From Saccostrea echinata (lineage: Eukaryota): DNA of 64,000 nucleotides. The stretch spans positions 12,772,001 through 12,836,000 of the forward strand of contig NW_026889774.1 of the NCBI RefSeq assembly GCF_033153115.1. The letters run 5' to 3'. Positions within the stretch are counted from its first letter, which is position 1. Every line of letters starts with the position of its first letter. Shown here in pieces: positions 803 to 56,555 of the stretch. The position numbers were made by a program, and so were the translations under genes. Under the pieces are notes generated by a model, which was given only the letters and a program-made list of their open reading frames with translations, was not told where the DNA came from and made no database searches.

Positions 803-3800
803 ATGGCAAGTGTTACAGCTGCCAAAAAGTTAGATTGCAAAGACTTACATGGATACTTAAAAACACTCTCTCACAGTATCCTTGATAAACTGTACAATCA
901 CCCGGCTACCTGTCTGGCGGTATTTCGGTAAATAACAGTTTAACACGAGATGCAGCAAATTATGTACAGTTGTAATAATGATAATGACAATTTATTTAAT
1001 TAATTATTTTTTTTGCAGACAACTTCCTCAGCTATCTAAACATTATGTGATGCGAATGCTTTTCATTGAACAACCAGTATCACAGTCTGCTGTTGGTTTA
1101 TGGGTTACCAATGAACACAATGAGTAAGTATGTATACATGTATAAGAGGACCTAGGCATTTCAATCTGCACATATTGACCTTGTAGCTATAGCAACTACA
1201 CTGTAAGTGAACAGTCAATCAAGTTCTCCAGATTAATTGGGAAAACATCCTCATCATATCCAGGGCTATGTCCAGAGATGTCAATCCAGTTTGCTTTCCA
1301 TTTTTTCCCCCTTTCAGTTATATTTGTTTCTGGCAAGAACTAAGAGACTTAAAAACCTACCAAGGTCGGAAACTAGGTTGTGTTATAAGAGCAAAGGTCA
1401 TGAGCATGGGGGAATGAAACTATATACATGGGACCCAGTAGTTCATTTGAGAGACTATCCGCATTGTAAGCACTTGGTCCTTAGTTTAAGTTCCAGTCAG
1501 ATTCCAACTTTTCTGTTCTTTTCCGTTTCAGTCAGTACAGTTTCTTGGAATAACAGCAAACTTGTTGCAAGATACATATCAGGGAGAAATTTTTTTTGAG
1601 CAAGACAACTGATAAACAAAACAAACTATACAAACTTTTGATCTGAAACTTGATTGAGCCAAAAAAAAAAATCCAAGATATCCAGGGATATTGAGGTTAA
1701 AGTGCTTAGATAAAAAGTGGTTGAGACTTGGACTTCCAACTCAGTGCTACAAATCAATGGTACTCAATATTTCAATGTTCAAGATACTGAAGTTCAACTG
1801 TAAATGAGTTAAGTACAAGTTTTGAGGAGTTTAGACATACAGTAACTGTGTATTCTCATGATATTGTTTCTTTTTATTCAGGATCGATTATATTAGTTTC
1901 TGAATTTATTTCTTGGACCTATCTCTGTTACAAAAATGTCAAATTGATTGGTGTTCATCATCTAGAAGTTGCCTGGTGTTGTTCATATTCATAGCAGTAT
2001 AATATAGCCAGAAGCACCCAACAAAAGAAACTGTTTTCTAGTGCATAATTTATAAAGTACATACCATGTTAATGATGAAAATGAATAAGATTCTGACACT
2101 AAATGTTTATTGTTCAGGGAACACAAATATGCTTCCAAAGTACTTTCTGATCTGAGAGTGTGGCATGAACAACAAATGCAAGGGGGTCTGCTGGGTTGGA
2201 TTCTGAATGAAACATTTCGCTCTAATATGAAAGTTGCTCTGCTTGGAGGGTAAGGTTCACAGCTGATGAATATAGATTGATGTTTAAAAAGATAATAATG
2301 AATTATTAGTTTAGTAATTTATCTTCCAATTTATTACTTAAAGGAGGATTTGTCTCTAAACTCTTTTATGGGTTGTTGCCAAAGCAAACTCAACCCTTAT
2401 TACATGTATTTTGCAGAGGACTGGATTCCAAGATTTCTGGAGGGCCTCTACCTCCAGACAAACATGCCAAGGACATTCCATTTTTAGATAAATATGCTCT
2501 TGAAAGATGGGAGGTATTCAATTGTACAATATCATCTTTCCTGAACATCAAGATTATAACCTTAAATTGCATTCTGAAAGTCAAAATGAGACAAAATTTA
2601 GACTGTTAAAATGTAATAATTTTATTTTTTATTTTTGGTACTTTCAACCAGAGGAATGTGTACATTTCCTTTAACATCTGTGTTTGTTTTGTAGTGTGTT
2701 CTCCATTTTATGGTGGGGTCCACTGAGGGGACAGAGGGAGTCAGTCGAGATATCATTGATGTTCTCCTTCATGCTGGACTCATGACCACGTAAATTTCTT
2801 TTTATAATACTTGACTCATGACCATGTAAATTTCTTTTTATTATACTGGAGTGGACTCATGACAATGTAAATTTCTATTTATTATGCTGGACTCATGACC
2901 ACGTAAATTTTTTTTTATTATGCTGGACTCATGACCCCGTAAATTTCTCTTTATTATACTGAACCCATGACCACGTAAATTTCTTTTTATTATACTGGAC
3001 TCATGACCACGTAAATTTCTATTCATTATGCTGGACTCATGCTCGTGTAAATTTCTTTTTATTATGCTGGACTCATGCTCGTGTAAATTTCTTTTTATTA
3101 TACTGGGCTCATGACCACGTAAATTTCTTTTTATCATACTGGACTCGTGACCATGTTAATTTCTGTTTATTATTGATTGTCAGTTCAAGTCATTACATAA
3201 TGTCTCTTCTTATCCCCACAAGAAGACAAATGTCATAAACTAGGACATTTAAACATTTCTCAGTCAATAATATATGAAGAATTAGTTATAAAACTATTGA
3301 TGATAGGGATGGTGTGGACCCTCTGCCGTCCATTACTCCTGCAGGTTTTCAGTTTCTGTTGATGGATACGGGGTCACAAGTTTGGTATTTCATGCTGCAG
3401 TACTTGGACACAGTTGAGGTAACATTTCTTATCAATAACTCACTACTATTTCATGCATTAAGTGTTATTTTGATTCTAAAAAAAGTAAAGATGGAGTTTG
3501 CATATGACAGTAGTATTTATTATTTTCAAGATTGGCTTTTGTAGATAAGACAAGAATTCTCTATTTTTAAGTTTTAGTAGATAAGTTTAGTAATTCATGT
3601 TTTACTCTCCTAATATAATTTTTTGACAGAGTCGTGGTATGGACCTTATAGACTGCTTATCATTCCTATTTCAACTTAGTTTTTCAACACTAGGAAAAGT
3701 AAGCATTGTAATATTGCATGAATCTAATTTTGATCTTTCATCTAAAGATAGTCATTCAGTGATTTCTCCATATAAATCTTAAAACACTTTTTCCAGGATT

Positions 3801-6800
3801 ATTCAACAGAGTTTATGAATGATGGACAACAAAGGTTTTTACAACATTTGAGGGAGTTTGGTCTTGTTTATCAAAGAAAGGTAATTAGGGGAGTTATAAT
3901 ACATGGGTTTTAGTAATGTTACTATTTATTGTATAAGTTCAGTGATAAAATTGTTTGCAGTCAAATCAAGGGTAACTTCTTCTGTCAAACATATTATTAT
4001 AAAGATTTTTTGGAGCAGGTCGATTCTTTAATAACTATGTCAAAGCCTAACTGAAATTTTGTAGTTATTTTATGGGACTTTGATTTACTTAAAGGAGTCA
4101 TAGTTGAATAAAGCTATGGTATATTTTTTGTAATATTGACTTTCTGTCATCACATCTATTATCAATTATATTTTGCCATTTTATCATTTGTATTATATTT
4201 CTGAGTAAAAGATTGTTTTTAAGGTAGAAGTCATTTTTCAAGACTGACATTAAGCATGATTAAATAGTGTTCATAAATACACATTATTTTTGCATATTAG
4301 AAAATCCTTTGCAAAGAAAAATCCCTGATCATGTTATGAGTATTAGTGCTTTGTTACAGAGGAAAATTCAGAGGTACTACCCCACCAGACTTGCCATCAA
4401 TCTTTCCTCTGGATTGTCAGACTTCACACTGGGAAAGAATACTGGTTATCTAATGGTGGAAACCAACTACAGAGTGTATGCCTACACAGGTATGTATAGA
4501 CTGCTGGCTATAGTAATGGTCAGAATAGATCTCTACTGTTAAACAGATGGCTGTACTTTTGAAAATAAAATTCTTATCTCCAATGGAGATAAGAATTCTC
4601 CATTCATTTAATGCCACCAAAAGATCAATGTAAAACATGTACGTGTATCTGCATAATGAGATATCCATACATGTTTTACATTGACCTTTTGGTAGCATTG
4701 AGTGAAGGAAGAATTTTGTACTAAATATTTCATATGGTTAAATCTGAATAGATACATAAATTACTACATCACTAGTATAAATAAGAGAGATGATAAAAGA
4801 GATAAAAACACATAAAAGAGATGATCTCTCAGTCTGGTGGTCTTTTGCCAGGTGTATCTCTTGTAAGAATCTCTGGAATAAACTTTTACATGTTTAGAAA
4901 TATATCGGGAAAAAAACATGAAAATCTTCTTCTTTAGAACATCAATTCTACAAAGTTTCACATGCAATATTGTCATTTGTTATAGATTTAAATGCTCTCG
5001 TAACTTGTCCCTGGATTGATGTACTAAAATTTTACACAATTCTCTGTACAAGGTAGATGATATGTGTGGATGTAGTGTCCCATGATTTGTTTTGGTTTTT
5101 CTGAGTACTGTTTTCTTCCTTATAGATTCTCCACTACTTGTGGCTCTGGTAGCATTGTTTTGTGAGATGTTATACAGGTAAGATATCTAAATAATACGCT
5201 AATGCTTTAATGATATCATGCATACACAACCCAATTTTGTAGATTAATATATATGTAACTTTTCATAGGTTTCCAACATTTTGTGTGGGAAATTTGACAC
5301 GTGGCAGTGTGAGAGATGCTTTAACCCGCGGAATCACAGCTGACCAGGTAGGTTAGAGATGCTTTAACCCAGGGAATCACAGCTGACCAGGTAGGTTAGA
5401 GATGCTTTAACCCGCGGAATCACAGCTGACCAGGTAGGTTAGAGATGCTTTAACCTGCAGAATCACAGTTGACCAGGTAGGTTAGAGATGCTTTAACCCA
5501 GGGAATCACAGCCGACCAGGTAGGTTAGAGATGCTTTAACCCGCGGAATCACAGCTGACCAGGTAGGTTATGGGAAGTCACCAAATAAAGTATTAAGGAT
5601 ATATCACAGCCAAATGTTAAAAGCAAATATTACTCAAAAATATCATGAAAAATCTTATTTTTATAGCAACTAACAAATAAATTTAAAAGTTACCCAAGTT
5701 ATAATGCTATAATTTAGAATGGGGCAGTTTACACTTCATGAATTAGGAAGTGGTTTATAGAAAAGTATAGATTGTTCCAACCTAGGGAAATGATTTTAAC
5801 TTGGATAACTATCAAATTCATTCCTTACAATTAAATTTTCTACTATAAAGAGTTGAAAATAAGATGATTTGTCCTCTAAAATGACATGAAAATGTACAAA
5901 ATTTTATTAAGCTGATTGATACGTTTTTTTGACGAAAGTCATATTTCACTTAGGCAACACAGGTTATATATGCTTTTGTTTTTGTCCAATCAAATAGTGA
6001 GAATTTGTTATGCAATGTACTCCTACTAAAATTTTGGTTCCAATGAAAGGTGTTATCAAGGTTATTAAAAATAGAAAAATGTGTAAAGAAAATTTAAACA
6101 AGCTCTTCTCCTAGTATTGGTCTGATCTCTGTAAAACATGATACACTGGTAGAGTATTTTACACCATGATGCACAACTCTGCATGCAAAACTATTTTTAA
6201 TTTTGATGAAAAATGTCACCAGGGTCATATATAGAAGTGGTATAATCTGAAAATCTTTATAAATGCTACTCCACAAACAGTTTTGGTTTGATTTCAATAT
6301 AATGTGTTGCAAACATCAAGATACATAGTTTTGTAAAACTTAAAGACAGTGTTTGAAATAAAAGTTTTTCTTTGTAGATAATATCCTTTTTAAAAACCCA
6401 TGCTCATCCTAAGATGCTGAGGAATGTAAGTATGATTGAAGGTGAAATAAAGCTAATCTAATGAAATACTGAGATTTTTTACAACATTTATTTATTTAAA
6501 TTTTATTATGCAGTATTATGTATAGTGCTAGTAGTATTATAATGTAGTACTAATTATGTAGTCACTTTCTAGCATCTAATGGAAATACAGTTCTCAACTT
6601 CACAATGTATCTGAAACTTGTGAAAATTAGGTCATTTTAAGTTTTTTCTATGTTTAGCATGTGTATGCACCTTGGTTTTAGACACCCCAGGTCAGAAAAA
6701 ACCAACAAAATCGGAAGTTCTGAAAACAACTCATTTGATCGAAACCTTTGAATTCTGATGATTTTTTCTATATTTGTCTAAAATCTGTCATATTAATACC

Positions 6801-42700: not shown

Positions 42701-45700
42701 AGTAAAGTGGCATTGTCAGGGGTCTGTGAAATGGTCTCTCACAGATCCTTAGTTCTGGGTTTGTACTCAGTTAATAAATCAAATGTGTAGTACACATTGA
42801 GGTTATGATCAATTCTTGTTCAGAAGATCAGAATATAATTGATGCATGTTTACAAGACCACTAAATGCAGATACATTGTGCATGTATTGGGAATTCACTT
42901 TCTTTAAGGTCTAATCAAAGCAGGAGTATGAAAGTTGTTTATAGAATACATGTCAAACAGCGCAGTTAGGGTATGAAACAGAATAACTTGAACACTCAGA
43001 CTCTACACATGAGTGCCAGAGTTAAGATAAAAGAAAAAATTAAAATTACATGTACATCATTTTCTGAAGAAAATTTTCACCTTGTGCCTAAATTATCCAT
43101 AAAATCTACATATTACAGCAAGGGAGAGACTTGATGGAATATCAAAACCAAGGTAAACAATTGTTTAGGAAGCTGTCCCAAGATCCTCAGCCTCCCGCCA
43201 GATGTAGTCTGGAAACTGGACCATTTATATTTCAGTAAGTACAGCTAATATGATCTATGAATCTTTTACCTGAATATGAAGGGATGATTTCATTAATACT
43301 ACTATTTATTATGTTTAATATAAACACTCTGGTATACTGAAAGCTGTTAATTGTTGATTTTTGATCCCTAAATGATGTTTGGAGGGATGAAAATTCTTTT
43401 ACTTGTATAGTGTATGCAATAAATCAAATTAACAAACAGAGAGAATTCACACAATAAGAATGGAAAAGGCTATACAGTTGGTCAATAAATTGAATACCAT
43501 GTACATGTATTAATTATTTAAAATCCATTAAAGTTATTGTCCATGTTTGATTCATAAATTTGTATAAACATTTTTATATATGACTAGTTATTTAGAACAA
43601 TAAGATAGTACTGTATAGTTTCATTTTTCCTCCATATTGCATTCTGTAAGGTTTTGCATTTGTTCCCATGCCTATTTTTAGCTCTATTGGTCAGAGACCA
43701 GAAGAGTTTATGCAATAGTAAAGTGTCTGTCGTCCCTTCATCTGTCTGTCTAGTTGTCCATCTTCAAATAATTTTTCAAAATGCTACTCCTCCTACAATT
43801 TTGGTCGGTTTTCATTATCACTTGGCACACAAGTAGACTACACTAAGATGCATAATTCTGTATATCCCCAGTTTTTGATTTATAAAAATAGAAATTTCTA
43901 TGAAATACTTTCAAAACGCTACTCCTTCTATAGTTTTGCTCTGATTTTAATATTACTTGGCACACAAGTAGACTACACTAAGATTCAATGAATGGTGTTG
44001 CCATGGTTACTAAAAAAGGAAATTTCTGTGAATTACTTTCAAAACACTTCTCCTCCTTCAGTTTGGTCTGATTTGAATATAACTTGGCATGCAAGTAGAC
44101 TACACTGAGATGCATAATTGTCTTTATCATTTTTTGATTTTAATGAATGATATTGCCATGGTTACTAAAAATTGAAATTTCTGTAAATAATTTTTAAAAG
44201 ACTCCTCTTCCTACAGATTTATTCTGATCTAATTGCAATAAATTTTGCCACAAAAAGAGACTAAACCAAGGATCATTATTCTGTTTATTGCTGTTTCAAG
44301 TACAAGTGCTATTTTTCTTTCCTTTGGTTTAAGTTCAAACCAGTAGAGCTACAGTCTCATCAGAGAGTTCTGGTTTCAGTTATGTAATAGAGAGAGGGGT
44401 GTGTTTTTTGGCCCTGTGTGAGCAGTCATTCTCAAAGAGACTGGCATTTTCCTTCTTAGAAGATTTACAAACTGAATTTACTTCCCAGTATGGACAGAAA
44501 GTGGATTCTGTTTCCAGGCCATATAGTTTTATAGAATTTGGTAAGTTTTATACATTACTGTTTCAGTACAGCTCAAAATGTGTGAACTGTTTTTACAAAA
44601 ATAGTGCAAGGCATTGTAAATTACACGAATGAATATTTATTTGAAAGTTGAAACTTATGGTAAACATATTGCTAAATATTTAAAATACATTGACTGAATA
44701 TAGTAAACATGTTGAAATTTCACTTGTAAACTTGCAGTAATAAAGTACCATTCTGTTAATAAAATGTTTTATTATTGCATTATTATCACAGACTCGTACA
44801 TAAAGAAATCAAGGAAAAGTTACATGGATTCTCGAGCTAGGAAGAACCTGAGCAACATCAATTCAGAGTTACAAGACGTGCACAGGATCATGGTTCAGAA
44901 TATAGAGGATGTCTTGTTAAGGGGAGAGAATTTGTCAGGTAAAAGTCATTTATTCATTGACAGTACCTTTCTGTATTACTGCTAGAAGACATTAACAATG
45001 ACATGTCAAGTCAATGGCTCAAACAGCAACCTTAATAAATTACGATGTATGGGTCATTTCCCAAATAAAAACAGAATATTGTAATGAAACCATAACATTA
45101 CCAATGAAAAAGTGAAGATTATGAACAGTGATTGATCAAAAAAAATCTATAAACAATACAAATCTGGAGATTACATAACCATTACCTAATCAACCACTTT
45201 CCACTGTGACAAACTACCCTCTCAAATAACTGATCACTGCCACCAAAATGTGATACCCACTCAAACCACTAATCACTGTGTCAAACCCACTTAAATAGAT
45301 ACCCACTCAAGCTACTAATCACTGTGTCAATGCCACTAAAATATGATACCCACTCAAACCACTAATTACTGTGTCAAAGCCACTTAAATATAATACCCAC
45401 TAAAACCACTGTGTCAAAGCCACTTTCAAACCACTAATCATTGTGTCAAAGCCACTTTCAAACCACTAATCACTGTGTCAAAGCCACTTAAATATGATAC
45501 CCACTCAAACCACTTAAATACTGACTTAAATAACTAATCACTGTGTCAAAGCCACCAAACTGAGTCCAGCTTTCTCAAATATATTATACATATACATATC
45601 TTATCCTATGAACATGTAAGGGCAGTGATAAATTTGATGCAAAGGATTAAGTACACCCAAAGGGTGATCATAGTTTCTCTGTATCTATTTAATTTTTCTG

Positions 45701-45940
45701 CTTGTTTTAAGTTTACTTACTTTTGTAAGACTTGCATTGTCCTGAGATTGTTCATAATTTGAAGATTTTTTTCCTGTCTTTGTAGATCTTGACAGTAAGG
45801 CCAGTAATTTGTCAGTGATGTCTCAGAAATATAGAAAAGATGCTCGATACCTAAATCTGCGATCAACCTACGCAAAAATCGCAGCCATAGTCATCGTCAT
45901 CATTGTGTTGCTCCTATTCTTGAGATATATGATTTGGTGA
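39785..45940 (+). CDS. SEC22B: Vesicle-trafficking R-SNARE Sec22b, 5 exons, 217 aa
   Basis: Exons 39785-39859, 43119-43234, 44380-44540, 44792-44938, 45786-45940 (654 nt). [19 protein letters not shown] longin start, [31 protein letters not shown] region and a C-terminal transmembrane helix. Confidence 0.97.
40270..40821. mobile_element. MITE with long degenerate TIRs (same family as the 57540 hairpin)
   Basis: atagtcgaaaatatctga...tgccagggaaa...gctgccaccaactga versus tcagttggaggcagc...ttcctggc...tcagatatttcagactat. Confidence 0.7.
42171..42600. mobile_element. Mariner/pogo-type MITE
   Basis: TIR cagggtgtttca / tgaaacaccctg. Right flank TA, left flank CA. Confidence 0.7.
43678..44375 (+). 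mobile_element. Non-autonomous Helentron-type (pearl-like) element ending at the SEC22B exon 3 acceptor
   Basis: 5' ttagctctattggtcagagaccagaagag, a TCTG microsatellite, core repeats, and 3' ccagtagagctacagtctc...tctggtt. Homologous to 62459-63357. Confidence 0.8.
45190..45557. repeat. Degenerate tandem repeat of about 47 bp in SEC22B intron 4
   Basis: Unit aaaccactaatcactgtgtcaaagccacttaaatatgatacccactc, about 7 partial copies. Confidence 0.85.
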
Positions 45941-46904: not shown

Positions 46905-47040
46905 TATGTTGGCTTCCGTAACCATAACTCACTGGTTAGAGCACTTGACTAGTGATACAAGGTCCCTGGTTTGATTCCCAGCCCAGCCATAGATTTTCTT
47001 TATGCATTCCTTCCTCCTTACTAAATTTGGTGGCCAGTGG
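46905..47040 (+). mobile_element. Decayed tRNA-like LTR plus PBS (relative of the TRIM at 10989-11953)
   Basis: taactcactggttagagcacttgactagtgat...ggtttgattccc (A/B-box-like), then a pyrimidine tract and aatttggtgg. Confidence 0.45.
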
Positions 47041-48343
47041 GAGGGGGGGTGGGGGTTGTTCAGGTTATTAAATTAAAAAGTCCTGGCGGGGCTCATGAAC
47101 TTGTGTCTTTGAAGTCAATATCCTTATCTCTCCATTCCGTAAAAACAATGGGCCCTGGCCCCTTCAAGGCCACAACTCCATTACTTTTAAGGAATGGATA
47201 GGTATTCAGACATCAACCTATCCTTAATCAGCCCTATCTGAGCTTAAACCTAATAACCCCTTCCAGATCCCATCCTCACAATGTCAAGGTTTTGTAATTT
47301 CGGAACTCCACACAAACCCTTGACATAAGTCACTTTTAAAAGTTGTGGTTACACATGACGTAATGGATAATTATAAACTAACCAATGAGAATGTATTTTT
47401 CAAATCCATCATTGCCAAATGCAGGAGGATAAAACGTACGCTCAACTAGGACCTCGGGTCACCCGCAAATAGTTCGTCATTTTGCGTAGTAATAAAACAT
47501 TATATGAACTCTTCAGGTATTAAAGGCACAAAAGTAAATTCATCTGTATCAATATGGTGACCTCAGGTCACCCTATATTTTGATTGAATTTTATTAAAAA
47601 AAAGTTTTCTCTGTCTTACTCCAATACAATTATATTAATAAAATTATATAGATCTTTCTAATAGATTAACAGAGACGTGAAGGTATGGTTTTAAATACTA
47701 AAACATGACAACAAGTTGATGTCATAATTAAGGCTCGGTGTCGGACGTTCCCCCCCCCCCCCCTTCACAAATGTTTCACTGGTTAACTTTATCAAACAAT
47801 ACATGTATTATTATCAGCAGTTTGAGAACCAATGTCTTTGTTACTGTGTTAAAAATTAACACACAGGGAAATTGAGACTTTTTCTTCATTCGTTCATCAG
47901 TCATAGACCTAAAGTGTTCAATTTAGGTCAATGGTTCAGAATTATCATCAGTCATCTACGATACTTAACTCTGCTTAATCTATAATTTATCCTATCTTAC
48001 ATCTGTTCCTATAGAAAAAGGAAAATCCACAGACTTTAAAAACTTTAAATGAGAAAAAAATTAAGTATAGATTTAGTTTTAATGTCCTGAATTTGTTCTC
48101 AAATTAACTGATTTTCAACTACAAATTCAAATAAAAAGGTTGAGATACCAAACAGAGATTGATCTCAAAAATCCTATTAACAAAGGAATTTGAAAACAGA
48201 GGATAAAACACAGATTCCTAAATTCCTGAGATAGGATCAGATGCATGAGAGGGATCATCCCTGGTCACATCAAATTTATTGTCACAAGCCTGCTTTGAGC
48301 AATATCTTGGATATGGAATGATAAAATAATGTGTCATATCAAT

Positions 48344-50163
48344 TCGAGACCGGAGGTCATCAGGTATTGTATATCAATAAGGAGACAAGAGTGTGCAAAA
48401 CAGTCACCAGATACCACCAATGTGAAGACTAGTGGTAAACTAATGTTTCATATCAAAACGGAGACTAGAGGTCACCTTATATTGTACATCAATAGGGAGA
48501 CCAGAGGTCACCTTCTATTGCACATCAAAACGGAGACCAGAGACCACCTTATATTGTACATCAATAGAGAGACCAGAGGTCACCTTTTATAGTACATCAA
48601 TAGGGAGACCAGTGGTAACCTTATATTATGCATAATTAGGGAGACCAGAGGTAACCTTCTATTGCACATCAAAACGGAGACCAGAGGCCATCATATATTG
48701 TACATCAATACGGAAACAATAAGACACCCTATATTGTACATAATTAGGGAGACCAGAGGTTACCTTATAATGTACATCAATACGGAGATCAAAGGACTCC
48801 TTATATTGTACATCAATAGGGAGACCAGTATTCAACTTATAGTTTACATTATTAGGGAGACCAGAGATCACCATTTATTGTATATCAGTTGGGAGACCAG
48901 GGGTCACCTTATATTGTACATAATTAGGGAGACCAAAGATCACCTTATATTGTATATTTTACATCAATAGGGAGACCAGAGGTCACCTTATATTATACAT
49001 CAATAGGGAGACCAGAGGTAACTTATTATGTACATCAATAGGGAGACCAGAGGACACCTTATATTGTACAGAATTAGGGAGACCAGAGGTCACTTATTTT
49101 GTACATCAATAGGGAAACCAGATGTAACTCATTTTGAACATCAATAGGGAGACCAGTGGTCACTTTATATATTACATAATTAGGGAGACCAAAGATCACC
49201 TTATATTGTATATCAATAGGGAGACCAGAGGTTACCTTATATTGTACATCAATAGGGAGACCAGAGGTTACCTTATATTGTATATCAATAGGGTGACCAG
49301 AGGTCACTTATTTTGTACATCAATAGGGAGACCATAGGACACCGTATATTGTAAATAATAAGGAGACCAAAGGTTACCTAATATTGTTCATCAATTGGAA
49401 GACCAGAGGTCACCATATATTGTACATAATAAGGGAGACCAGAGGTCACCTTATATTGTACATAATAAGAGAGACCAGAGGTCACCTTATATTGTATATC
49501 AATAGGGAGACAAGAGGTCACCTTATATTGTATATTGTACATCAAGAGGGAGACAAGAGGTCACATTATATACATCAATAAGGAGACTAGAGTTTACCTT
49601 ATATTGTACATCAATAGGGAGACAAGAGGTCACTTATTTTGTACATCAATAGGGAGACCAGAGGTCACCTTATATTGTACATAATTAGGGGGACCAGAGG
49701 TCACCTTATATTGTACATTAATAGGGAGACCAGAGGACACTGTATATTGTACATAATTAGGGAGACCAGAGGCCGGCCTGTTCAACAGCGCAAACGTTTG
49801 CGAGTGCTCGCCAACATTTCTGTTGAAAGAATAAGGAATTTAGGTGAGCGCTCGCCGACATTTGCTTTGTTGAACAGGCCTCTGAGGTAACTTATTTTGT
49901 ACATCAATAGGGAGACCAGAGGTCACCTTATAATGTACATAATTAGGGGGACCAGAGGTCACCTTATATTGTACATCAATAGGGAGACCAGAGGACACTG
50001 TATATTGTACATAATTAGGGAGACCAGAGGTCAACTTATATTGTACATCAATAGGGAGACCAGTTGACACCTTATTTTGTACATAATTAGGGAGACCAGA
50101 GATCACCTAATATTGTATATTGTACATGAATAGGGAGACAAGAGATTACTTTATATTGAACAT
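48344..50163 (+). repeat. 36-bp satellite array, left arm (roughly 45-50 monomers)
   Basis: Monomer agggagaccagaggtcaccttatattgtacatcaat. It produces the spurious RETRGHLILYIN ORFs. Confidence 0.95.
49770..49881. mobile_element. Small palindromic MITE inserted in the satellite (PIF/Harbinger-like)
   Basis: TIR ggcctgttcaaca / tgttgaacaggcc, with CAG / CTG (CWG) flanks, splitting one monomer gagaccag|aggtaac. Confidence 0.75.
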
Positions 50164-50216
50164 CTTGTTTCCCTATTAATGTACTTTATAAGTTGATCTC
50201 TGGTCTCCATAATGAT

Positions 50217-50630
50217 ATCTCTCAGTTGATACAATACGGAAGAGCATGTTCTACGTATGAACAATTTTTAAAACAAAGTAAGTTATTGACAAAGAAGTTG
50301 ATGAAGCAAGAATATCAGTAGTCTCGTTTAAAGTTATCATTTCGTAAGTTCTATGGTCGATACAATGACCTTGTTGGCAATTAAGTCAAATGCTGACTGA
50401 CTTTTTTCAAACTGATTGTTAGCCCATTATTCACACACTGAGTTGTCCACGGATTTTTCCGTTTTTTTCCCGAACATGATAAGGAGCACACGGCGGGTGT
50501 GACCGGTCGGCATGGGATGCTCACTCCTCCATGGCACCTGATCCCACCTCTGTTGTTTGCTCCGCTCCTATTTTGTAATGTTTAATGGACTTTTGAGCTC
50601 GAATACTGTTCGTTATCTCCACATATTTCA
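50217..50630 (+). mobile_element. 5'-truncated Penelope-like retroelement fragment (RT thumb plus 3' terminal region)
   Basis: 50217-50384 translates ISQLIQYGRACSTYEQFLKQSKLLTKKLMKQEYQ*SRLKLSFRKFYGRYNDLVGN*, resembling the PLE RT thumb. Decayed reverse copies of the 3' region lie near 48150-48270 and 45100-45170. Confidence 0.7.
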
Positions 50631-50854
50631 TAATCTTTATTTGTGTTATGATATAAAAGAACTTTTTCAATCTTTGTTTATGTAAGATATGAGAAATTAT
50701 GGAGTGAAAGAAGTAATTTTTTCTTCACATGATTATATGTTCAGAAGCTTATTTCCATAATTATTGCCTTTATTTTGTTTTTGAGTTGTCTTTTAGTTAA
50801 ACAGAGTCTAGAATCATAGAAGCCTGATCTCTGCATCCATATAAACTTTTTGTG

Positions 50855-53800
50855 ATACCTGGTCTCCCTATAACACTGTAATGTACAATATATGGAGACC
50901 TCTGGTCTCCGTATTCATTCACAACGTTACGTGACCTCTGCATTGTCTCCCTAATTATGTTTTATATAAGAGGACCTCTGGTCTTGGCATTTGTATAAAC
51001 TCTATGTAACCTCTGGTCTCTCTAATGATCAACATAAGGTAACCTTTGATCTCCACAATGAAGTACAACAAAAGCCTAATGATATACAACATAAGGTGAC
51101 CTCTGGTCTCCGTATCGATGTACAATATTAGGTGACCTTTGATTTCCCTATCAATGTAAAATATAAGGTGACCTCTGGTCTCCCTATTGATGTACAATTT
51201 AAAGTGACCTTTGGAATCCCTTATGATGTACACTATAAGGTGTCCTCTGGTCTCTCTACTAATGTACAATATAAGGTGACCTCTAGTCTCCCTATTGATG
51301 TACAATATAAGGTGACCCCTGGTCTCCCTATTGATGTACAATATTAGGTGACCTTTGATTTCCCTATTAATGTAAAATATAAGGTGACTTCTGGTCTCCC
51401 AAGGATGTACAATATAAGGGGACCTCTGGTCACCCTAATGAAGTACACCATATGGGGACCTCTGGTCTCCATATTCATATTATACACAGCCTTATGTGAT
51501 CAGTGGTCTGCAAATGATGAACAATATAAGATGTTCTCTGGTCTTCATATTCATACACAACTTAATGTGACCTCTGGTCTCTTAATAATGTTCACCATAA
51601 GATGACCTCTGGTCACCGTATTCATTAACACTTTTATATAAAATATGGTCTCCCCAGTGATTAACAAAATAAGGGGACCCCAGGTCTCCGCATTCATGTA
51701 CAATATAATGTGACCTCTGGTCTCCCAACTAATGTACAATATAAGGTGACTTCTGGTCTCCCTATTGATGTAAAATAGAAGATGTCCTCTGGTTTCAATA
51801 TTGATATACAATATAAGGTGTCCTCTGGTCTCCCAACTAATGATGATATAAGGGGACCTTTGGTCTCCCTATTGATGTACAATATAACTGATCTCTGGTT
51901 TCCCTATTGCTTTACAATATAAGGTGTCTTCTGGTCTCCCTACTGATGTAGGATATAAGGGACCTGTGGTCTCCCTACTAATGTACAATATAAGGTGACC
52001 TCTGGTCTCCCTATTGATGTCAAATATAAGGTGTCCTCTGGTTTCCCTACTGATGTACAATATAAGGTGTCCTCTGGTCTCCCTACTGATGTAGGATATA
52101 AGGGGACCTTTGGTCTCCCTATTGATGCACAATATAAGTGATCTCTGGTTTCCCTATTGATGTACAATATAAGGTGTCTTCTGGTCTCCCTACTGATGTA
52201 GGATATATTGGGACCTCTGGTCTCCCTAATGATGTACAATAGAAGGTGTCCTCTGGTCTCCCTAGAGATGTAGGATATAAGGGGATCTCTGGTCTCCCTA
52301 ATGATGTAGGATATAAGGGGACCTTTGGTGTTCCTATTGATGTACAATATAAGGGGACCTCTGCTCTCCCTATTGATGTACAAAATAAGTTACCCCTGGT
52401 CTCCATAATTATGTACAATATACAGTGTCCTCTGGTCTCCCTATTGATGTACAATATAAGGTGACCTCTGGTCCCCCTAATTATGTACAATATAAGGTGT
52501 CCTCTGGTCTCCCTATCGATGTACAAAATAAGTTACCTCTGGTCTCCCTAATTCTTTACAATATAAGGTGTCCTCTTGTCTCCGTATTTATGTACAATAT
52601 AAGGTGGCCTTTAGTCTCCCTATTGATGTACAAAATAAGTGACCTCTTGTCTCCCTATTGATGTACAATATAAGGTGACCTCTGGTCTCCCTATTGATGT
52701 ACAATATAAGGGGACCTCTGGTCACCCTAATGAAGTACACCATATGGGGACCTCTGGTCTCCGTATTCATATTATACACAACCTTATGTGAGCAGTGGTC
52801 TGCAAATGATGAACAATATAGGGTGACCTCTGGTCTTCATATTCATACACAACTTTATGTGACCTCTGGTCTCTTGAATAATGTACAACATAAGATGCGA
52901 TCTGGTCTCCGTATTTATTAACACTTTTATATGAAATATGGTCACCCCAATGATTAATAAAATAAGGGGACCCCAGGTCTCCGTATTCATGTACAATATA
53001 ATGTGACTTCTGGTCTCTCTACTAATGTACAATATAAGGTGACCTCTGGTCTCCCTATTGATGTACAATATAAGAGATCTCTGATCTCCCTTTTGATGTA
53101 CAATATAAGGTGTCTTCTGGTCTCCTTATGGATGTAGGATATAAGGGGACCTCTGGTCTCCCTGTTGATGTAGGATATAGGGGACCTCTGGTCTCCCTAT
53201 TGATGTAATATATAAAGTGTCCTCTGATCTCCCTACTGATGTAGGGTATAAGGGGACCTTTGGTCTCCCTGTTGATGTACAAATGATCACTGGTTTCCCT
53301 ATTGATGTACAATACAAGGTGCCCTCTGGTCTCCCTAAAGATGTAGGATATGAGGGGATCTTTGGTCTCCCTTTTGATGTACAATATAAATTATAAGAGA
53401 TCTCTGGTCTCCCTTTTGATGTACAATATAAGGTGTCTTCTGGTCTCCTTATGGATGTAGGATATAAGGGGACCTCTGGTCTCCCTGTTGATGTAGAATA
53501 TAGGGGACCTCTGGTCTCCCTATTGATGTAATATATAAAGTGTCCTCTGGTCTCCCTACTGATGTAGGGTATAAGGGGACCTTTGGTCTCCCTGTTGATG
53601 TACAAATGATCCCTGGTTTCCCTCTTGATGTACAATACAGGGTGCCCTCTGGTCTCCCTAAAGATGTAGGATATGAGGGGACATCTGGTCTCCCTATTAA
53701 TATTTGATATAAGGTGACCTCTGGTCCCCCTATTTATGTACAATATAAGGTGTCCTCTGGTCTCCCTATAGATGTAGGATATAAGGGGACCACCTCTGGT

Positions 53801-53925
53801 CTCCCTATAGATGTAGGGTATAAGGGGACCTCTTGTCTTTCTTTTGATGTACAATACAATGTGATCTTTGGTCCTCCTAATGATGTACAATATAAGGGGA
53901 CCTATGGTCTCCCTATTCATATAAA
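50855..53925 (-). repeat. 36-bp satellite array, right arm, inverted orientation (roughly 80-85 monomers)
   Basis: Monomer attgatgtacaatataaggtgacctctggtctccct on the plus strand. The orientation switch occurs at about 50164. Confidence 0.95.
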
Positions 53926-55255
53926 CTTTATGTTTCCTCTGCTCCCCACATAAAGAATATGGAAACATGAGTTTGTCTTATACTGTACATCAATAAGGAT
54001 ATCAGAGGTCAGACGAAGTGGTATATGAATCAGTAGACCAGAGGTAATCTTATATTGTTCATTATTAGGAAAACATGGGGTCACTTGAAGTTATAAGAAG
54101 ACAATTTAAAAAATGTTGCATGTGAAGAATTATTTTTCAAATTCACTCAAAACAAAACTTGAGACCCTGATTTTTTTTACAAGCAAACAATTTCACAATT
54201 TCTCCAAATTTATTCTCTAAATTTATGTAATTGGATGGGGGATGACATTAGACAACTTTTCCTTCATATACAGTATATGTATCCCACAAGCAATTGACAA
54301 AGGGTCCATGTTTTTTTAAGTTTGTTATTTTGGAAAATATACTAGTAGTTTTGATTCGTTTATGAATTTGATAAGTGTAAATTCCAGGGAAAGGGAAGGA
54401 GAACATCAGCCTCCATCCTTGCAAGACTGGGCATACATCTACTCTGTAAGATTAATATTAACCAGAGGTTTACTAGAGTGTTAAACTGATAAGGTCGCCT
54501 ATTGAGGTATGACCTCAAAAGGGAGACCAAAGGACACCTAATATAATTTATTACCAAATAATTATTCCATTATCTTTAAGGATCAGTGAAGAGTCCGAGC
54601 GGGGTGGGGGGGGCAAGACCTACAATGTACCTCCTCCCCCTATCTGTTAGATCTGCGAATGCAGAGACAGGAGGTCGCCTACCCTGATATATTAAAATGA
54701 GATCAAAGGTTAGCTACTGTGTTAAATAGATACTGTTGCCTTACATGGAATAATAATATCATTAGGGAGACCACAGGTCACCCTACGTAATCCATTGCTG
54801 TATAACTTATATTTTATAATATATTGCAGTCAATGTTGCTCCCCCCTGTATCTTTCCTCATATCAGATGATTATTCCTTTGACAAAAATAGATTTTCTGT
54901 TTGTTGTTTTACACTGTAAAGGCTTCACAGTAGTGCGATTTATTCTATTTTTACTTTACGGTTGCAATGCACTACATTTTGTCGCGGAGTAAACAGGTTT
55001 GATAGCTGTGAACTGAGCCGGTGACCTAAGGTCCTAGTTGAGCGTACGTTTTATCCTTCTGCTTTTCAAATGGCCCAACTCCAGAGCATATCTTTTGTTA
55101 CTGTTAGGATGACGATCTTCCAAAAATTAATCCCCGATGTTTCATTTAATATAACTAGTCACAAATCCTACTATATCGACTCTTTCCATTTTAAAGACGA
55201 GTCATATTTGCTTACAAAACTCACCTACAATAAAAGCTGTTTTCTGATTGGTTCC

Positions 55256-55448
55256 TACAGATGCCGGTTGGTGCCAGGTAGAAAAAATATTTTATCTGGC
55301 GGCCGCCAAATAATTTTCTGGTGGCCGCCAGATAACTTATCTGGCGGCCGCCAGATAAAATATTTTTCTTATCTGGCGGCCGCCAGAAAATTATTTGGCG
55401 GCCGCCAGATAAAATATTTGTTCTACCTGGCACCTACCGGCTTCCGTA
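55256..55448. mobile_element. Palindromic MITE with internal GCGGCCGC repeats and 6-bp TSD
   Basis: TIR tacagatgccggttggtgccaggtagaa / ttctacctggcacctaccggcttccgta, GGTTCC on both flanks, four NotI sites plus one variant. Confidence 0.85.
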
Positions 55449-55571
55449 GGTTCCAGTCCTAGACCAGGAACAAATGAAATGGTAGCTTTCTAGCCCAACT
55501 TTTAGATAACGACTTATGTCAAGGGTTTGTGTGAAGTTCCAAAATCACAAAACCTTGACATTGTGAGGATG

Positions 55572-56555
55572 TCCAGATCCAAGACCATTGTCCCCTCCAA
55601 AGCCCAGACCTTAGTCACCCCTTCATGAACCCAGTTCGTAGTAGCCCCTTACAGGGCTAGTACCTTAGTCACCCCTTCATGAACCCAGATCTTAGTAGCC
55701 CCTTACAGGGCTAGTACTTTAGTTACCCCTTCATTATCCAAGACCAAATTCAATTCTATCTGAGACCATAGTTATCCCTTCTTTGGCCAAGACCTTTGTC
55801 ATCCCTTCCTGAACCCAGACCTAAGTTATCCCTTCTGGAGCCCAGACATAAAACTCTTTTTCCTGAACCCAAACGTTAGTAAAGTTTCCTAAGCTCAGAC
55901 TTTTAGTCACCCTTTCCTGAACCAAGACTTTAACCAGCCTTTCCTGAATTCAGAAATACAGACTTAATTCATATGTTTTTGATCCCAATTCTAAGTCAGA
56001 CCTTCCTGAGTTGAGACCATAGTCACCCCTTATACAGCCAAGACCTTTGTGGTCCCTTCCTTAGCTCAGACCTTAATCAGCCTTGCCTGAGCTCAGACCT
56101 TAGACATTCCTCCTTTATACTTGACCTCAGCAACCTCTTTCTGAGCCCTGAATTTAGTTGGCACCTTAAGCCCCGACCTAAATCAGCCCTCTCTGAGCCC
56201 AGAACTTATTCACTCCTTCCAGTACCCAGACCTTAATCAGCCGTCTCTGAGCCCAGAACTTATTCACCCCTTCCAGCCCAGTCCTTATTTAGCCCTTCCT
56301 GAGCTTATACCTTAATCAGTCCTTTATGAAACCAGAACTAATTCATCGCTTTCTGAGCTCAGACCTTATTCATTCATTTTTAAGCCCAGACCCTAATCAG
56401 CCTTTCCTGACACCGACTTTATTAATCCCTTTTTGAGCCTAGACCTGAATCAGCTCTCCTGAGCCCAGACCTGTCACCCCTCCCTGAGCTCACACTTTTT
56501 TTTAGCCCTTACTTAGCCCAAATCTTTATCAGCCCTTCTTGAGCACAAACCTTAT
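55572..56555. repeat. Degenerate tandem repeat of about 27 bp (continues at 47215-47270 on the other side of the 8.3-kb insertion)
   Basis: Approximate consensus cccttcctgagcccagaccttaatcag. Confidence 0.8.

What the first reader, a model, noticed from the sequence alone, without database searches (positions are those of the whole stretch)
47262..55580. 8.3-kb foldback-like transposon built from two inverted satellite arrays, with a perfect 9-bp TSD
Seen: 61-bp TIRs (CATCCTCACAATGTCAAGG..., 3 mismatches), TCCAGATCC duplicated on both sides, a second 43-bp inverted box, and a 27-bp host repeat split by the insertion. Inside are about 1.8 kb of 36-bp monomers in one direction and about 3 kb in the other, with no transposase. 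Known: CA...TG ends with a 9-bp TSD fit AcademH-type elements, and 9-bp TSDs with repeat-built arms also describe Mutator/Foldback elements. Inference: this is a mobile satellite cassette that inserted as one unit and can fold into a multi-kb hairpin or yield dsRNA. I do not recognise it as a described family.
Basis: partly seen in the sequence, partly recalled or inferred. Interest (0 to 1): 0.85.

Follow-up and report, generated by a model that had tools for sequence, protein, structure and literature searches.

The report
Nested transposons, one carrying satellite arrays
The 8.3-kb "foldback transposon" is really three ordinary mobile elements nested inside one another, and the satellite belongs to the inner 7.6-kb element, one copy of a young family of about 100-190 that carries two inverted 36-bp repeat arrays wherever it jumps.

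Summary
These are the 61-bp inverted ends with 3 mismatches, the perfect TCCAGATCC duplication, the second 43-bp inverted box, the two inverted 36-bp arrays (48 and 83 monomers), the lack of any coding frame, and the split 27-bp host repeat.

The structure is not one transposon. The outer ends and the 9-bp duplication belong to a roughly 458-bp MITE present in hundreds of copies. Two other elements later inserted into that MITE:
- A 7,642-bp non-autonomous TIR element at 47421-55062, which ends GCAG...CTGC and is flanked by its own 9-bp duplication of MITE sequence.
- A 193-bp palindromic MITE at 55256-55448, with the 6-bp duplication GGTTCC.

The "second inverted box" is the TIR of the 7.6-kb element. 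That element belongs to a family with 147 TIR ends and about 175-195 loci in this genome. Copies are 3-17 kb long and mostly have perfect 9-bp duplications. They share one architecture: TIR, unique segment, forward array, centre, inverted array, unique segment, TIR. The arrays align copy to copy at 89-97% identity, so they travel with the element. The MITE/inner-element junction occurs only once in the genome.

Best reading: a foldback-like, probably Mutator-type, non-autonomous transposon nested in a MITE. This is a new member of a known kind. No autonomous partner was found, and no read-level check was possible.

The parts
47214..47261 (.). Left edge of the host 27-bp minisatellite. It continues on the other side of the nest at 55581 to about 56555. 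This is the insertion target of the outer MITE.
   Evidence: Windows with 19-22 of 27 matches to the 27-bp consensus at 47214-47258, and none in a 4-kb control. TRF arrays at 55603-56555.
47262..47270 (.). Target-site duplication of the outer MITE, left copy (TCCAGATCC).
   Evidence: Identical to 55572-55580. The MITE family makes 9-bp duplications: 13 of 22 copies are perfect.
47271..47420 (+). Outer MITE, left part. It corresponds to MITE consensus positions 1-157 and includes the 61-76-nt TIR.
   Evidence: BLAST of the 458-bp consensus built from 16 genomic copies. Alignment shows 8 substitutions plus 7 bases of deletion in two gaps. Hundreds of genomic copies.
47412..47420 (.). Target-site duplication of the inner element, left copy (TTGCCAAAT). 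It matches the right copy at 7 of 9 positions and differs by one adjacent dinucleotide.
   Evidence: MITE consensus positions 149-157 are present on both sides of the insert.
47421..55062 (+). Inner 7,642-bp non-autonomous TIR element (GCAG...CTGC). This is the real carrier of the satellite.
   Evidence: Ends defined by where about 40 other genomic copies start to match. 147 TIR ends genome-wide against 0 in the control. 9-bp duplications in other copies.
47421..47463 (+). Left TIR of the inner element (43 nt). Its inner end holds the motif GACCTCGGGTCACC.
47548..47579 (+). Solitary 36-bp-type monomer in the left subterminal region. It contains the palindromic core GGTGACCTCAGGTCACC.
   Evidence: 26 of 32 matches to the monomer consensus, and 0 of 500 shuffles reach that score.
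48333..50170 (+). Array 1: 48 monomers of 36 bp in forward orientation. The TRF core is 48452-50117.
49773..49883 (.). Palindromic insert of about 111 bp inside array 1, private to this copy. It may be a fourth nested small element.
   Evidence: Absent from the orthologous array position of the C17 copy. Forms a hairpin in the fold.
50171..50858 (+). Central non-repeat segment. Positions 50215-50631 derive from the 3' part of a retroelement: the end of an open frame plus its tail.
   Evidence: Shared by all complete copies examined. Resembles the 3' end of an RT-like element nested in copy C3. The Atlas lead is the PF26215 HTH_animal family.
50859..53917 (-). Array 2: 83 monomers of 36 bp in inverted orientation. 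The TRF core is 51075-53917.
53918..55019 (+). Right unique segment of the inner element. It is not homologous to the left unique segment (47464-48332).
   Evidence: Self-BLAST finds only the 50-nt terminal inverted match outside the arrays. 176 candidate loci in the genome, all within family copies.
55020..55062 (-). Right TIR of the inner element (GCAGAAGG... when read inward).
55063..55071 (.). Target-site duplication of the inner element, right copy (TTTTCAAAT). It equals the MITE consensus.
55063..55255 (+). Outer MITE, middle part (consensus positions 149-341).
   Evidence: 95.9% identity to the consensus.
55256..55448 (.). 193-bp palindromic MITE with GGCGGCCGCC-containing repeats. It is flanked by the 6-bp duplication GGTTCC (55250-55255 and 55449-55454).
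   Evidence: Interrupts MITE consensus positions 336-341. Arms and duplication shown. At least 909 candidate copies in the genome, matching exactly these bounds. Contigs from other MITE copies skip it (joints).
55449..55571 (+). Outer MITE, right part (consensus positions 336-458), including the right TIR.
   Evidence: 95.9% identity to the consensus.
55572..55580 (.). Target-site duplication of the outer MITE, right copy (TCCAGATCC).

Best explanation
The locus is a nest built by successive cut-and-paste insertions, not a single transposon.

Order of events:
1. A roughly 458-bp MITE (ends CATCC...GGATG) inserted into a non-coding 27-bp minisatellite. The site is about 1.3 kb downstream of the last SEC22B coding exon. 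This insertion duplicated TCCAGATCC.
2. A 7,642-bp non-autonomous TIR element inserted at MITE position about 149-157 and duplicated 9 bp of MITE sequence.
3. A 193-bp palindromic MITE inserted at MITE position 336-341 and duplicated GGTTCC. Its timing relative to step 2 is unknown.

The 7.6-kb element:
- It belongs to a young family in this genome, about 98.5% identical to its consensus, with roughly 100-190 loci.
- The family is foldback-like. Each copy has 43-nt TIRs and about 1 kb of unique sequence at each end. Two arrays of the same 36-bp monomer face each other across a central segment of about 0.7-1 kb.
- The arrays are old (monomers are about 75% alike) but are inherited copy to copy, so the satellite spreads by riding the element.

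Inferred, not shown:
- A transposase supplied in trans moves the family. A Mutator-superfamily enzyme is most likely, given the 8-10-bp (mostly 9-bp) duplications and the great abundance of Mutator-type transposase genes in this genome.
- That transposase recognises the TIRs. The GACCnnnGGTCACC motif is a candidate binding site. It sits in the inner part of both TIRs, in subterminal solo monomers and in every monomer.
- Array length changes by unequal exchange or slippage, which would explain copy sizes of 3-17 kb.
For: Nesting:
- The MITE consensus aligns to the window in three colinear pieces: 1-158, 149-341 and 336-458. The pieces overlap by 9-10 and 6 bases exactly at the two interruptions.
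- 13 of 22 MITE copies have perfect 9-bp duplications.

Inner element as a family:
- Both ends match about 40 scored loci each at 88-98%, out of 174 and 188 candidates.
- The 33-nt TIR occurs 147 times with 2 or fewer mismatches, against 0 for the control pattern. The G-type end is always on the left and the A-type end on the right.
- Of 13 other copies, 9 have perfect 9-bp duplications with unrelated sequences. One each has 8 bp, 10 bp, and 9 bp with one mismatch. One copy has an altered left end and is unclear.

Shared architecture:
- Four complete copies show the same layout.
- At least 7 more loci hold arrays on both strands.

Arrays travel with the element:
- In-register identity between copies is 89-97%. 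Off-register identity is about 75-88%.
- Listed array hits fall inside known TIR pairs or beside known single family ends, apart from two loci that could not be placed from the partial lists.

Relative age:
- The inner copy is 98.0-98.5% identical to the family consensus.
- The MITE is about 95-96% identical to its consensus.

Junction:
- The MITE/inner junction is unique in the genome. All other hits start at the inner terminus.

Motif:
- 117 hits in the window, all inside the element, against 0.33 expected.
- A solo monomer is present near the left end.

Mutator background:
- 922 first-look candidate loci for PF20700 and 139 for PF10551.
- Foldback elements with 8-10-bp duplications are generally placed in Mutator (PMC4079207).
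Against: - No autonomous copy was found. None of the listed Mutator or MULE domain hits lies inside or next to a listed TIR pair. A 12.9-kb copy owes its extra length to a nested retroelement.
- The inner element's duplication in this particular copy is imperfect, 7 of 9, differing by one adjacent TT/GC dinucleotide.
- AcademH elements also make 9-10-bp duplications (PMC10045372), so the superfamily is not settled.
- No read-level support exists for this locus. The only two public runs found are small sets of contigs that hit other copies, not the flanks.
- No empty allele is present in the assembly.
- The left and right unique segments are not inverted copies of each other. The element is therefore not a classical foldback whose whole arms are repeats.
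- Conservation across the monomer is fairly even, so nothing shows selection on the motif.
Confidence: 0.85

Rival explanations
1. One reading: the whole 8.3 kb is one composite foldback transposon. It was mobilised through the outer CATCC...GGATG ends and inserted here as a unit, creating TCCAGATCC.
For: The outer TIRs are intact, with 3 mismatches in 61 nt, and the outer 9-bp duplication is perfect. In principle the MITE's transposase could move anything lying between its ends.
Against: - The outer ends plus internal segments add up to a complete 458-bp MITE. It is interrupted at two points, and each interruption has its own duplication.
- The MITE/inner junction is found only at this locus. 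About 39 other inner-element left ends begin exactly at 47421 with unrelated flanks.
- The outer MITE is more diverged from its consensus than the inner element is from its own. That fits insertion of the inner element in place.
Confidence: 0.06
2. The nested structure is right, but the inner family is not Mutator-type. It is mobilised by another superfamily that makes 9-10-bp duplications, for example AcademH.
For: AcademH generates 9 or 10-bp duplications (PMC10045372). No Mutator or MULE coding copy was linked to the TIR. The 43-nt TIR is short for a typical MULE (this last point rests on my own knowledge).
Against: Most foldback-type elements with 8-10-bp duplications have been tied to Mutator (PMC4079207). 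This genome is very rich in Mutator-type transposase genes. No AcademH-type gene was sought or seen here.
Confidence: 0.25
3. The inverted arrays are an assembly artefact, such as a chimeric or foldback read, or a collapsed and mis-joined repeat.
For: The long inverted repeats are built of 36-bp units, and no spanning reads could be examined.
Against: The same two-array architecture recurs at more than 10 independent loci, flanked by different target-site duplications. Array segments are orthologous between loci at 89-97%. There are no Ns in the window. Monomers are only about 75% alike, which makes the arrays easy to assemble.
Confidence: 0.02
4. A Helitron/Helentron-type carrier of satellite-like repeats, as described in oysters.
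For: Dispersed short satellite arrays carried by non-autonomous elements are typical of Helentrons in bivalves (PMC7492417, title and abstract).
Against: Helitrons have neither terminal inverted repeats nor 8-10-bp target-site duplications (my own knowledge). Both are present at essentially every copy here.
Confidence: 0.01

Closest known systems
Foldback (FB) transposons of Drosophila and Tetris of D. virilis (PMC4079207)
   Same: - Non-coding copies.
- Inverted arms containing arrays of short tandem repeats.
- Target-site duplications of 8-10 bp.
- Tandem repeats that resemble a piece of the terminal or subterminal sequence.
- An autonomous copy that is hard or impossible to find.
- Arrays of variable length.
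   Different: - In this family the repeats do not build the TIRs. About 1 kb of unique sequence, unrelated on the two sides, separates each 43-nt TIR from its array.
- The arrays face each other across a centre that contains a retroelement fragment.
- No sequence similarity was tested or is expected.
- The monomers here are old (about 75% alike), not freshly homogenised.
Non-autonomous Mutator-like elements (MULEs)
   Same: Duplications are mostly 9 bp, with a range of 8-10 bp. The ends are G...C. The elements carry non-coding cargo. The host genome holds many Mutator-type transposase genes.
   Different: No coding partner has been linked to the family. The TIR is only 43 nt. The internal inverted satellite arrays are not a usual MULE feature.
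MITEs and other DNA transposons with internal tandem repeats that seed satellites (Xenopus miDNA4 and Xstir, bivalve MITE-like elements; review PMC12628747)
   Same: A TIR element carries a tandem repeat whose copy number varies between copies, and the repeat is spread by transposition.
   Different: Those elements usually hold one array in one orientation and are small. This family holds two opposed arrays totalling up to several kb.
Galileo (P superfamily foldback-like element of Drosophila)
   Same: It has long inverted arms with internal tandem repeats that hold extra transposase-binding sites (as cited in PMC4079207). This is the model for the motif idea proposed here.
   Different: Galileo makes 7-bp duplications (my own knowledge) and belongs to the P superfamily. 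This family makes 9-bp duplications.

Membership tests
MITE (outer element, 47271-55571 minus its inserts) | Short (under about 800 bp), non-coding, with terminal inverted repeats | tested here: met
   The consensus is 458 bp and the TIR is 61-76 nt. That the consensus holds no open frame is my reading of it, not a tool result.
MITE (outer element, 47271-55571 minus its inserts) | High copy number, with target-site duplications of fixed length | tested here: met
   At least 645 first-look candidates. 13 of 22 copies have perfect 9-bp duplications, and most of the rest are one mismatch or one base off.
Foldback-type transposon (inner element) | Inverted arms containing tandem repeat arrays | tested here: met
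   48 forward and 83 inverted monomers share one consensus. The same layout is seen in 4 complete copies and in at least 7 further loci.
Foldback-type transposon (inner element) | The whole arms, from the termini inward, are inverted repeats built of those tandem repeats | tested here: not met
   Only 43-50 nt at the termini are inverted. The unique segments of 0.87 kb on the left and 1.1 kb on the right are unrelated.
Foldback-type transposon (inner element) | Target-site duplication of about 9 bp | tested here: met
   9 of 13 other copies have perfect 9-bp duplications. One each has 8 bp, 10 bp, and 9 bp with one mismatch.
Mutator superfamily (inner element) | Duplications of 8-11 bp, typically 9 bp | tested here: met
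   The range for the MuDR/IS256 group is given in PMC10045372.
Mutator superfamily (inner element) | An autonomous relative with the same termini encodes a Mutator-type DDE transposase | tested here: inconclusive
   No listed PF10551 or PF20700 hit lies within or beside a listed TIR pair. A TIR-variant pattern gave 4 hits against 8 in the control.
AcademH | Duplications of 9-10 bp | tested here: met
   Both the outer MITE and the inner family make mostly 9-bp duplications. The AcademH range comes from PMC10045372.
AcademH | The autonomous element encodes a transposase plus a helicase, with family-typical termini | not tested
   The primary paper (Kojima 2020) is not in the held library. No autonomous copy was identified.
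Helitron/Helentron satellite carriers | No TIRs and no target-site duplication | tested here: not met
   TIRs and duplications are present in essentially all copies.

The most novel reading that the evidence does not exclude
The two opposed arrays may not be passive cargo. One possibility is that, through the GACCnnnGGTCACC core, they act as a dense field of about 130 extra transposase-binding sites per element and help the family transpose. The other is that read-through transcripts fold into kilobase-long hairpins that feed small-RNA silencing of the family. About half of array 1 lies within perfect complements of 21 nt or more to array 2. Either would explain why a young burst of copies keeps arrays whose monomers diverged long ago.
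Probability: 0.15. Interest if true: 0.5.

Novelty: new member of a known kind. Interest (0 to 1): 0.3.

Why it matters
The finding corrects a tempting misreading. A perfect duplication plus inverted ends around a satellite looked like a giant new foldback transposon, but it is a nest of three common element types.

What remains is a clean, well-populated example of how a tandem repeat is spread through a genome by a cut-and-paste element:
- There are dozens of dated copies.
- The arrays are orthologous between copies yet vary in length.
- The repeated unit contains a motif that is also present in the element's own ends.

This is useful material for studying how satellites arise from and travel with transposons, and for annotating this repeat-rich genome. 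It does not define a new kind of element.

Tried and rejected
- Autonomous partner: four routes, none successful. A 12.9-kb copy (C3) proved to owe its extra length to a nested RT-like retroelement. A diverged end on C19 proved to be a truncated copy with no ORF of 120 aa or more in 10 kb. Coordinates of PF10551 and PF20700 hits did not overlap the TIR ends. They match other copies of the repeats and give no coverage of the unique flank. A search with the left flank found no second allele or haplotig in the assembly.\n- Rfam scan of 46.5-56.5 kb: only sub-threshold miRNA-like hairpin matches over the palindromic MITE, and no ribozyme.\n- Pfam on the longest frames: nothing. One sub-threshold DDE_Tnp_1_5 hit (19.7 bits against a cut-off of 28.1) lies in a translated repeat and was dismissed as chance. 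Pfam on the RT-like frames of the C3 copy also gave nothing.\n- A coding role for the 36-bp (12-codon) monomer: rejected. Three of six frames are open in the consensus by composition alone, and real frames break after about 100-280 aa.\n- The apparently greater divergence of the left MITE arm (90.5% by BLAST): explained by a 7-base indel. Substitution divergence is about 5%, similar to the right part.\n- The AcademH primary paper could not be read.


Full report
**Observation.**
- The outer ends 47271-47331 and 55511-55571 are inverted copies, 61 nt with 3 mismatches. BLAST extends this to 76 nt at 91%.
- TCCAGATCC stands at 47262-47270 and again at 55572-55580.
- A second inverted pair lies at 47421-47463 and 55020-55062, 43 nt with 3 mismatches.
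- TRF finds a 36-bp array at 48452-50117 (46 copies) and its reverse complement at 51075-53917 (79 copies).
- Counting degenerate edge units, there are 48 and 83 monomers. The consensus is identical in both arms. Mean pairwise identity is 78% and 72% within the arms and 75% between them, with no clear higher-order period.
- No frame of 80 aa or more has a Pfam match above the cut-off.
- The host 27-bp repeat starts at about 47214 and continues after the insertion to about 56555. It is non-coding.

**The outer ends belong to a small MITE.**
- The first 200 nt of the structure match the genome's own assembly (G000, 923 Mb; the window is C25:12772001-12836000). There are at least 645 candidate places, but only over the first roughly 151 nt. 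A second inverted TIR typically follows 437-465 bp away.
- In 22 extracted copies the element is 402-465 bp (one is 250 bp) and ends CATCC...GGATG. Thirteen copies have perfect 9-bp duplications, and most of the others are one mismatch or one base off.
- A 458-bp consensus aligns to the window in three colinear pieces: positions 1-158 at 47271-47421, 149-341 at 55063-55255, and 336-458 at 55449-55571.
- So the "8.3-kb element" is a complete MITE interrupted twice. At each interruption a few MITE bases are present on both sides, which is the signature of later insertions.

**The large insert is a separate transposon.**
- Its ends read GCAGGAGGATAAAACG... on the left and, read inward, GCAGAAGGATAAAACG... 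on the right.
- Each end, 300 nt long, matches about 40 scored loci at 88-98%, out of 174 and 188 candidates.
- The 33-nt TIR occurs 147 times with 2 or fewer mismatches. The reversed control pattern occurs 0 times.
- Left ends always carry the G variant and right ends the A variant. This points to descent from one master.
- Pairing ends on the same contig gives elements of about 3.1 to 16.8 kb.
- Every copy has G before CAG and C after CTG, so the termini are GCAG...CTGC.
- With those termini, 9 of 13 other copies have perfect 9-bp duplications of unrelated sequence. One has 8 bp, one has 10 bp, one has 9 bp with a mismatch, and one has a damaged end.
- In the window copy the duplication is TTGCCAAAT on the left and TTTTCAAAT on the right. 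The right copy equals the MITE consensus, and the left differs by one adjacent TT-to-GC change.
- A 120-nt probe across the MITE/inner junction matches in full only at this locus. All 39 other hits begin at the inner terminus. The composite has therefore left no other copy. The simplest history is insertion of the 7,642-bp element (47421-55062) into a resident MITE.
- Ages agree with this. The inner copy is 98.0-98.5% identical to its family consensus over about 2 kb of unique sequence, and the family median is about 98.5%. The MITE is about 95-96% identical to its consensus once a 7-base indel is set aside.

**The small insert is a third element.** 55256-55448 is a 193-bp near-perfect palindrome with GGCGGCCGCC-containing repeats. 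It is flanked by GGTTCC on both sides. At least 909 candidate copies in the genome match exactly these bounds. Contigs from other MITE copies in two public runs skip just this stretch (joints). A further palindromic insert of about 111 bp sits inside array 1 at 49773-49883. It is absent from the orthologous place in the C17 copy.

**Anatomy of the satellite-bearing family.**
- I read four complete copies: the window copy, C7 (4.5 kb), C17 (7.6 kb) and C3 (12.9 kb).
- All have the same order: TIR, about 1 kb of left unique sequence, forward array (5-67 units), centre, inverted array (33-85 units), about 1.15 kb of right unique sequence, TIR.
- At least seven more loci show array hits on both strands within one TIR pair.
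- The left and right unique segments are unrelated. This is therefore not a classical foldback whose arms are repeats from the tips inward.
- The centre (50171-50858) contains, at 50215-50631, the end of an open frame and the tail of a retroelement. The same kind of element is nested in full in the C3 copy. The Atlas lead for that frame is the HTH_animal family PF26215. Pfam itself gave nothing.
- From memory only, the nested element looks like a Penelope-like element with an N-terminal GIY-YIG domain. I did not test this.

**The arrays ride with the element.**
- Monomers within an array are only about 75% alike. The same array segment in different copies is much closer. The window against C17 gives 89-91% over 1.7-1.8 kb in register, against 76-83% out of register.
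- A 431-nt piece of array 2 finds its counterpart at 93-97% in eight other copies. Out-of-register matches run from about 75% to 88%.
- The listed array hits fall inside known TIR pairs or beside known single family ends. The number of candidate loci, 195, equals that of the unique ends. Two loci (C28:4114291 and C1:23709685) could not be placed from my partial lists.
- So the "satellite" is essentially a transposon-internal repeat. It expanded long before the recent burst of transposition and is now spread by it. Copy sizes differ mainly through array length and nested insertions.

**A shared motif.**
- GACCNNNGGTCACC with 1 or fewer mismatches occurs 117 times in the 64-kb window against 0.33 expected. 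Every occurrence lies between 47450 and 55033.
- It sits in the inner part of both TIRs, in subterminal positions, and in most monomers. Orientation is forward on the left half and reverse on the right.
- A solitary monomer (26 of 32 matches; 0 of 500 shuffles reach it) lies 128 nt inside the left end. A weaker one lies inside the right end.
By analogy with Tetris and Galileo (PMC4079207), the arrays may have grown from a subterminal transposase-binding repeat. That is inference. Conservation along the monomer is even, so there is no sign of selection on the core.

**Superfamily.**
- Duplications of 8-10 bp, mostly 9 bp, together with foldback-like form point to Mutator. The same argument was used for Tetris.
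- The genome holds very many Mutator-type genes: 922 first-look candidates for PF20700 and 139 for PF10551, with many open frames of 500-1,138 aa.
- None of the listed hits lies in or beside a listed TIR pair.
- A pattern designed to catch diverged TIRs gave 4 hits against 8 in the control.
- AcademH also makes 9-10-bp duplications (PMC10045372) and cannot be excluded. Its primary description was not available.
- I put Mutator at about 0.6, another superfamily at about 0.25, and leave the rest open.

**Structure-forming potential.** 893 of the 1,840 bases of array 1 lie within a perfect complement of 21 nt or more to some place in array 2. The longest such match is 84 nt. The inner 1.5 kb folds as a long imperfect hairpin around the centre. 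Whether the element is transcribed, or makes small RNAs, could not be tested. No RNA run holds it, and the two runs found are small contig sets that match other copies only.

**Context.** The last coding exon of a SEC22B-like gene on the + strand ends at about 45,940. The nest therefore lies about 1.3 kb downstream, in its 3' UTR or just beyond it, inside a non-coding minisatellite.

**Limits.**
- There is no read-level confirmation and no empty allele.
- The autonomous partner is unknown.
Only four full copies were read, and no Mutator gene region could be inspected.
- The organism is coded and was not identified.
- Other first-stage notes report further Mutator/foldback-like elements with 9-bp duplications elsewhere in this genome. 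I did not check them.

**Verdict.** The locus is a nest of three, possibly four, ordinary TIR elements. The satellite belongs to a young, abundant, non-autonomous, foldback-like family that is probably Mutator-mobilised. It is a new member of a known kind and of moderate interest.

Noticed in passing
G000 outside the window: C79:3-52670, C122:161-48376, C29:10665784-10690905, C12:25104823-25117943, C29:18941021-18957543, C52:37-15507: Mutator-type transposase frames (PF20700) stand in head-to-tail arrays. Periods are 4.0 kb (open 588-aa frames, up to about 14 units), 3.85 kb (685 aa) and 3.64 kb (665 aa). In effect this is a satellite whose unit is an apparently intact transposase gene.
   Followed up: no
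window 55256-55448: A 193-bp almost perfectly palindromic MITE built around repeated TCTGGCGGCCGCCAGA units, with the 6-bp duplication GGTTCC. It has at least 909 candidate copies in the genome and gives sub-threshold miRNA-like Rfam matches.
   Followed up: partly
window 49773-49883: A palindromic insert of about 111 bp (ends GGCCTGTTCAACAG.../...CTTTGTTGAACAGGCC) inside array 1. It is absent from the orthologous position of the C17 copy and is probably another very small MITE.
   Followed up: partly
window 50215-50631; L084 (C3 copy) 2672-5129, minus strand: The centre of every family copy contains the 3' end of a retroelement: a frame ending ...ISQLIQYGRACSTYEQF..., plus its tail. A near full-length relative with RT-like frames is nested in the C3 copy. 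The Atlas lead is PF26215 HTH_animal. Pfam gave no hit, and no hammerhead ribozyme was found by Rfam.
   Followed up: partly
window 46924-47118: A repeat of about 200 bp, 71-84% identical to dozens of loci, some in short tandem runs spaced about 265 bp apart (for example C1:43573052-43573772). It lies just left of the insertion site.
   Followed up: no
window 47214-47261 and 55581-56555: A non-coding 27-bp minisatellite with 54-bp and 133-bp higher periods and a strong C-over-G skew. It was the landing site of the outer MITE.
   Followed up: partly
window 44399-45940, + strand: Exons of a SEC22B-like gene: longin part, SNARE motif, then a last exon with the membrane anchor ending at about 45,940. 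The transposon nest lies about 1.3 kb downstream.
   Followed up: partly
G000 C29:1753817, C29:1873115, C29:1949035 (minus strand): Three identical 24-mers share the first 17 nt of the inner element's TIR (GCAGGAGGATAAAACGT) and then diverge. They may be ends of a related, possibly autonomous, element within a local triplication, or they may be chance.
   Followed up: no
L056/L057 (C64:7347442-7356402 and C14:6538666-6547605); L075/L076 (C27:1484966 and C30:1911043): Pairs of family copies on different contigs share the same flanking bases. These are segmental duplications or uncollapsed haplotigs, not independent insertions.
   Followed up: no
flanks of family copies on C17, C7, C1 and C52 (L033, L034, L068, L050): Four insertions have TCCGG next to or overlapping the duplication. 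Two of them (C7 and C1) have nearly the same flank in opposite orientation. This suggests repeated insertion into another dispersed repeat.
   Followed up: no
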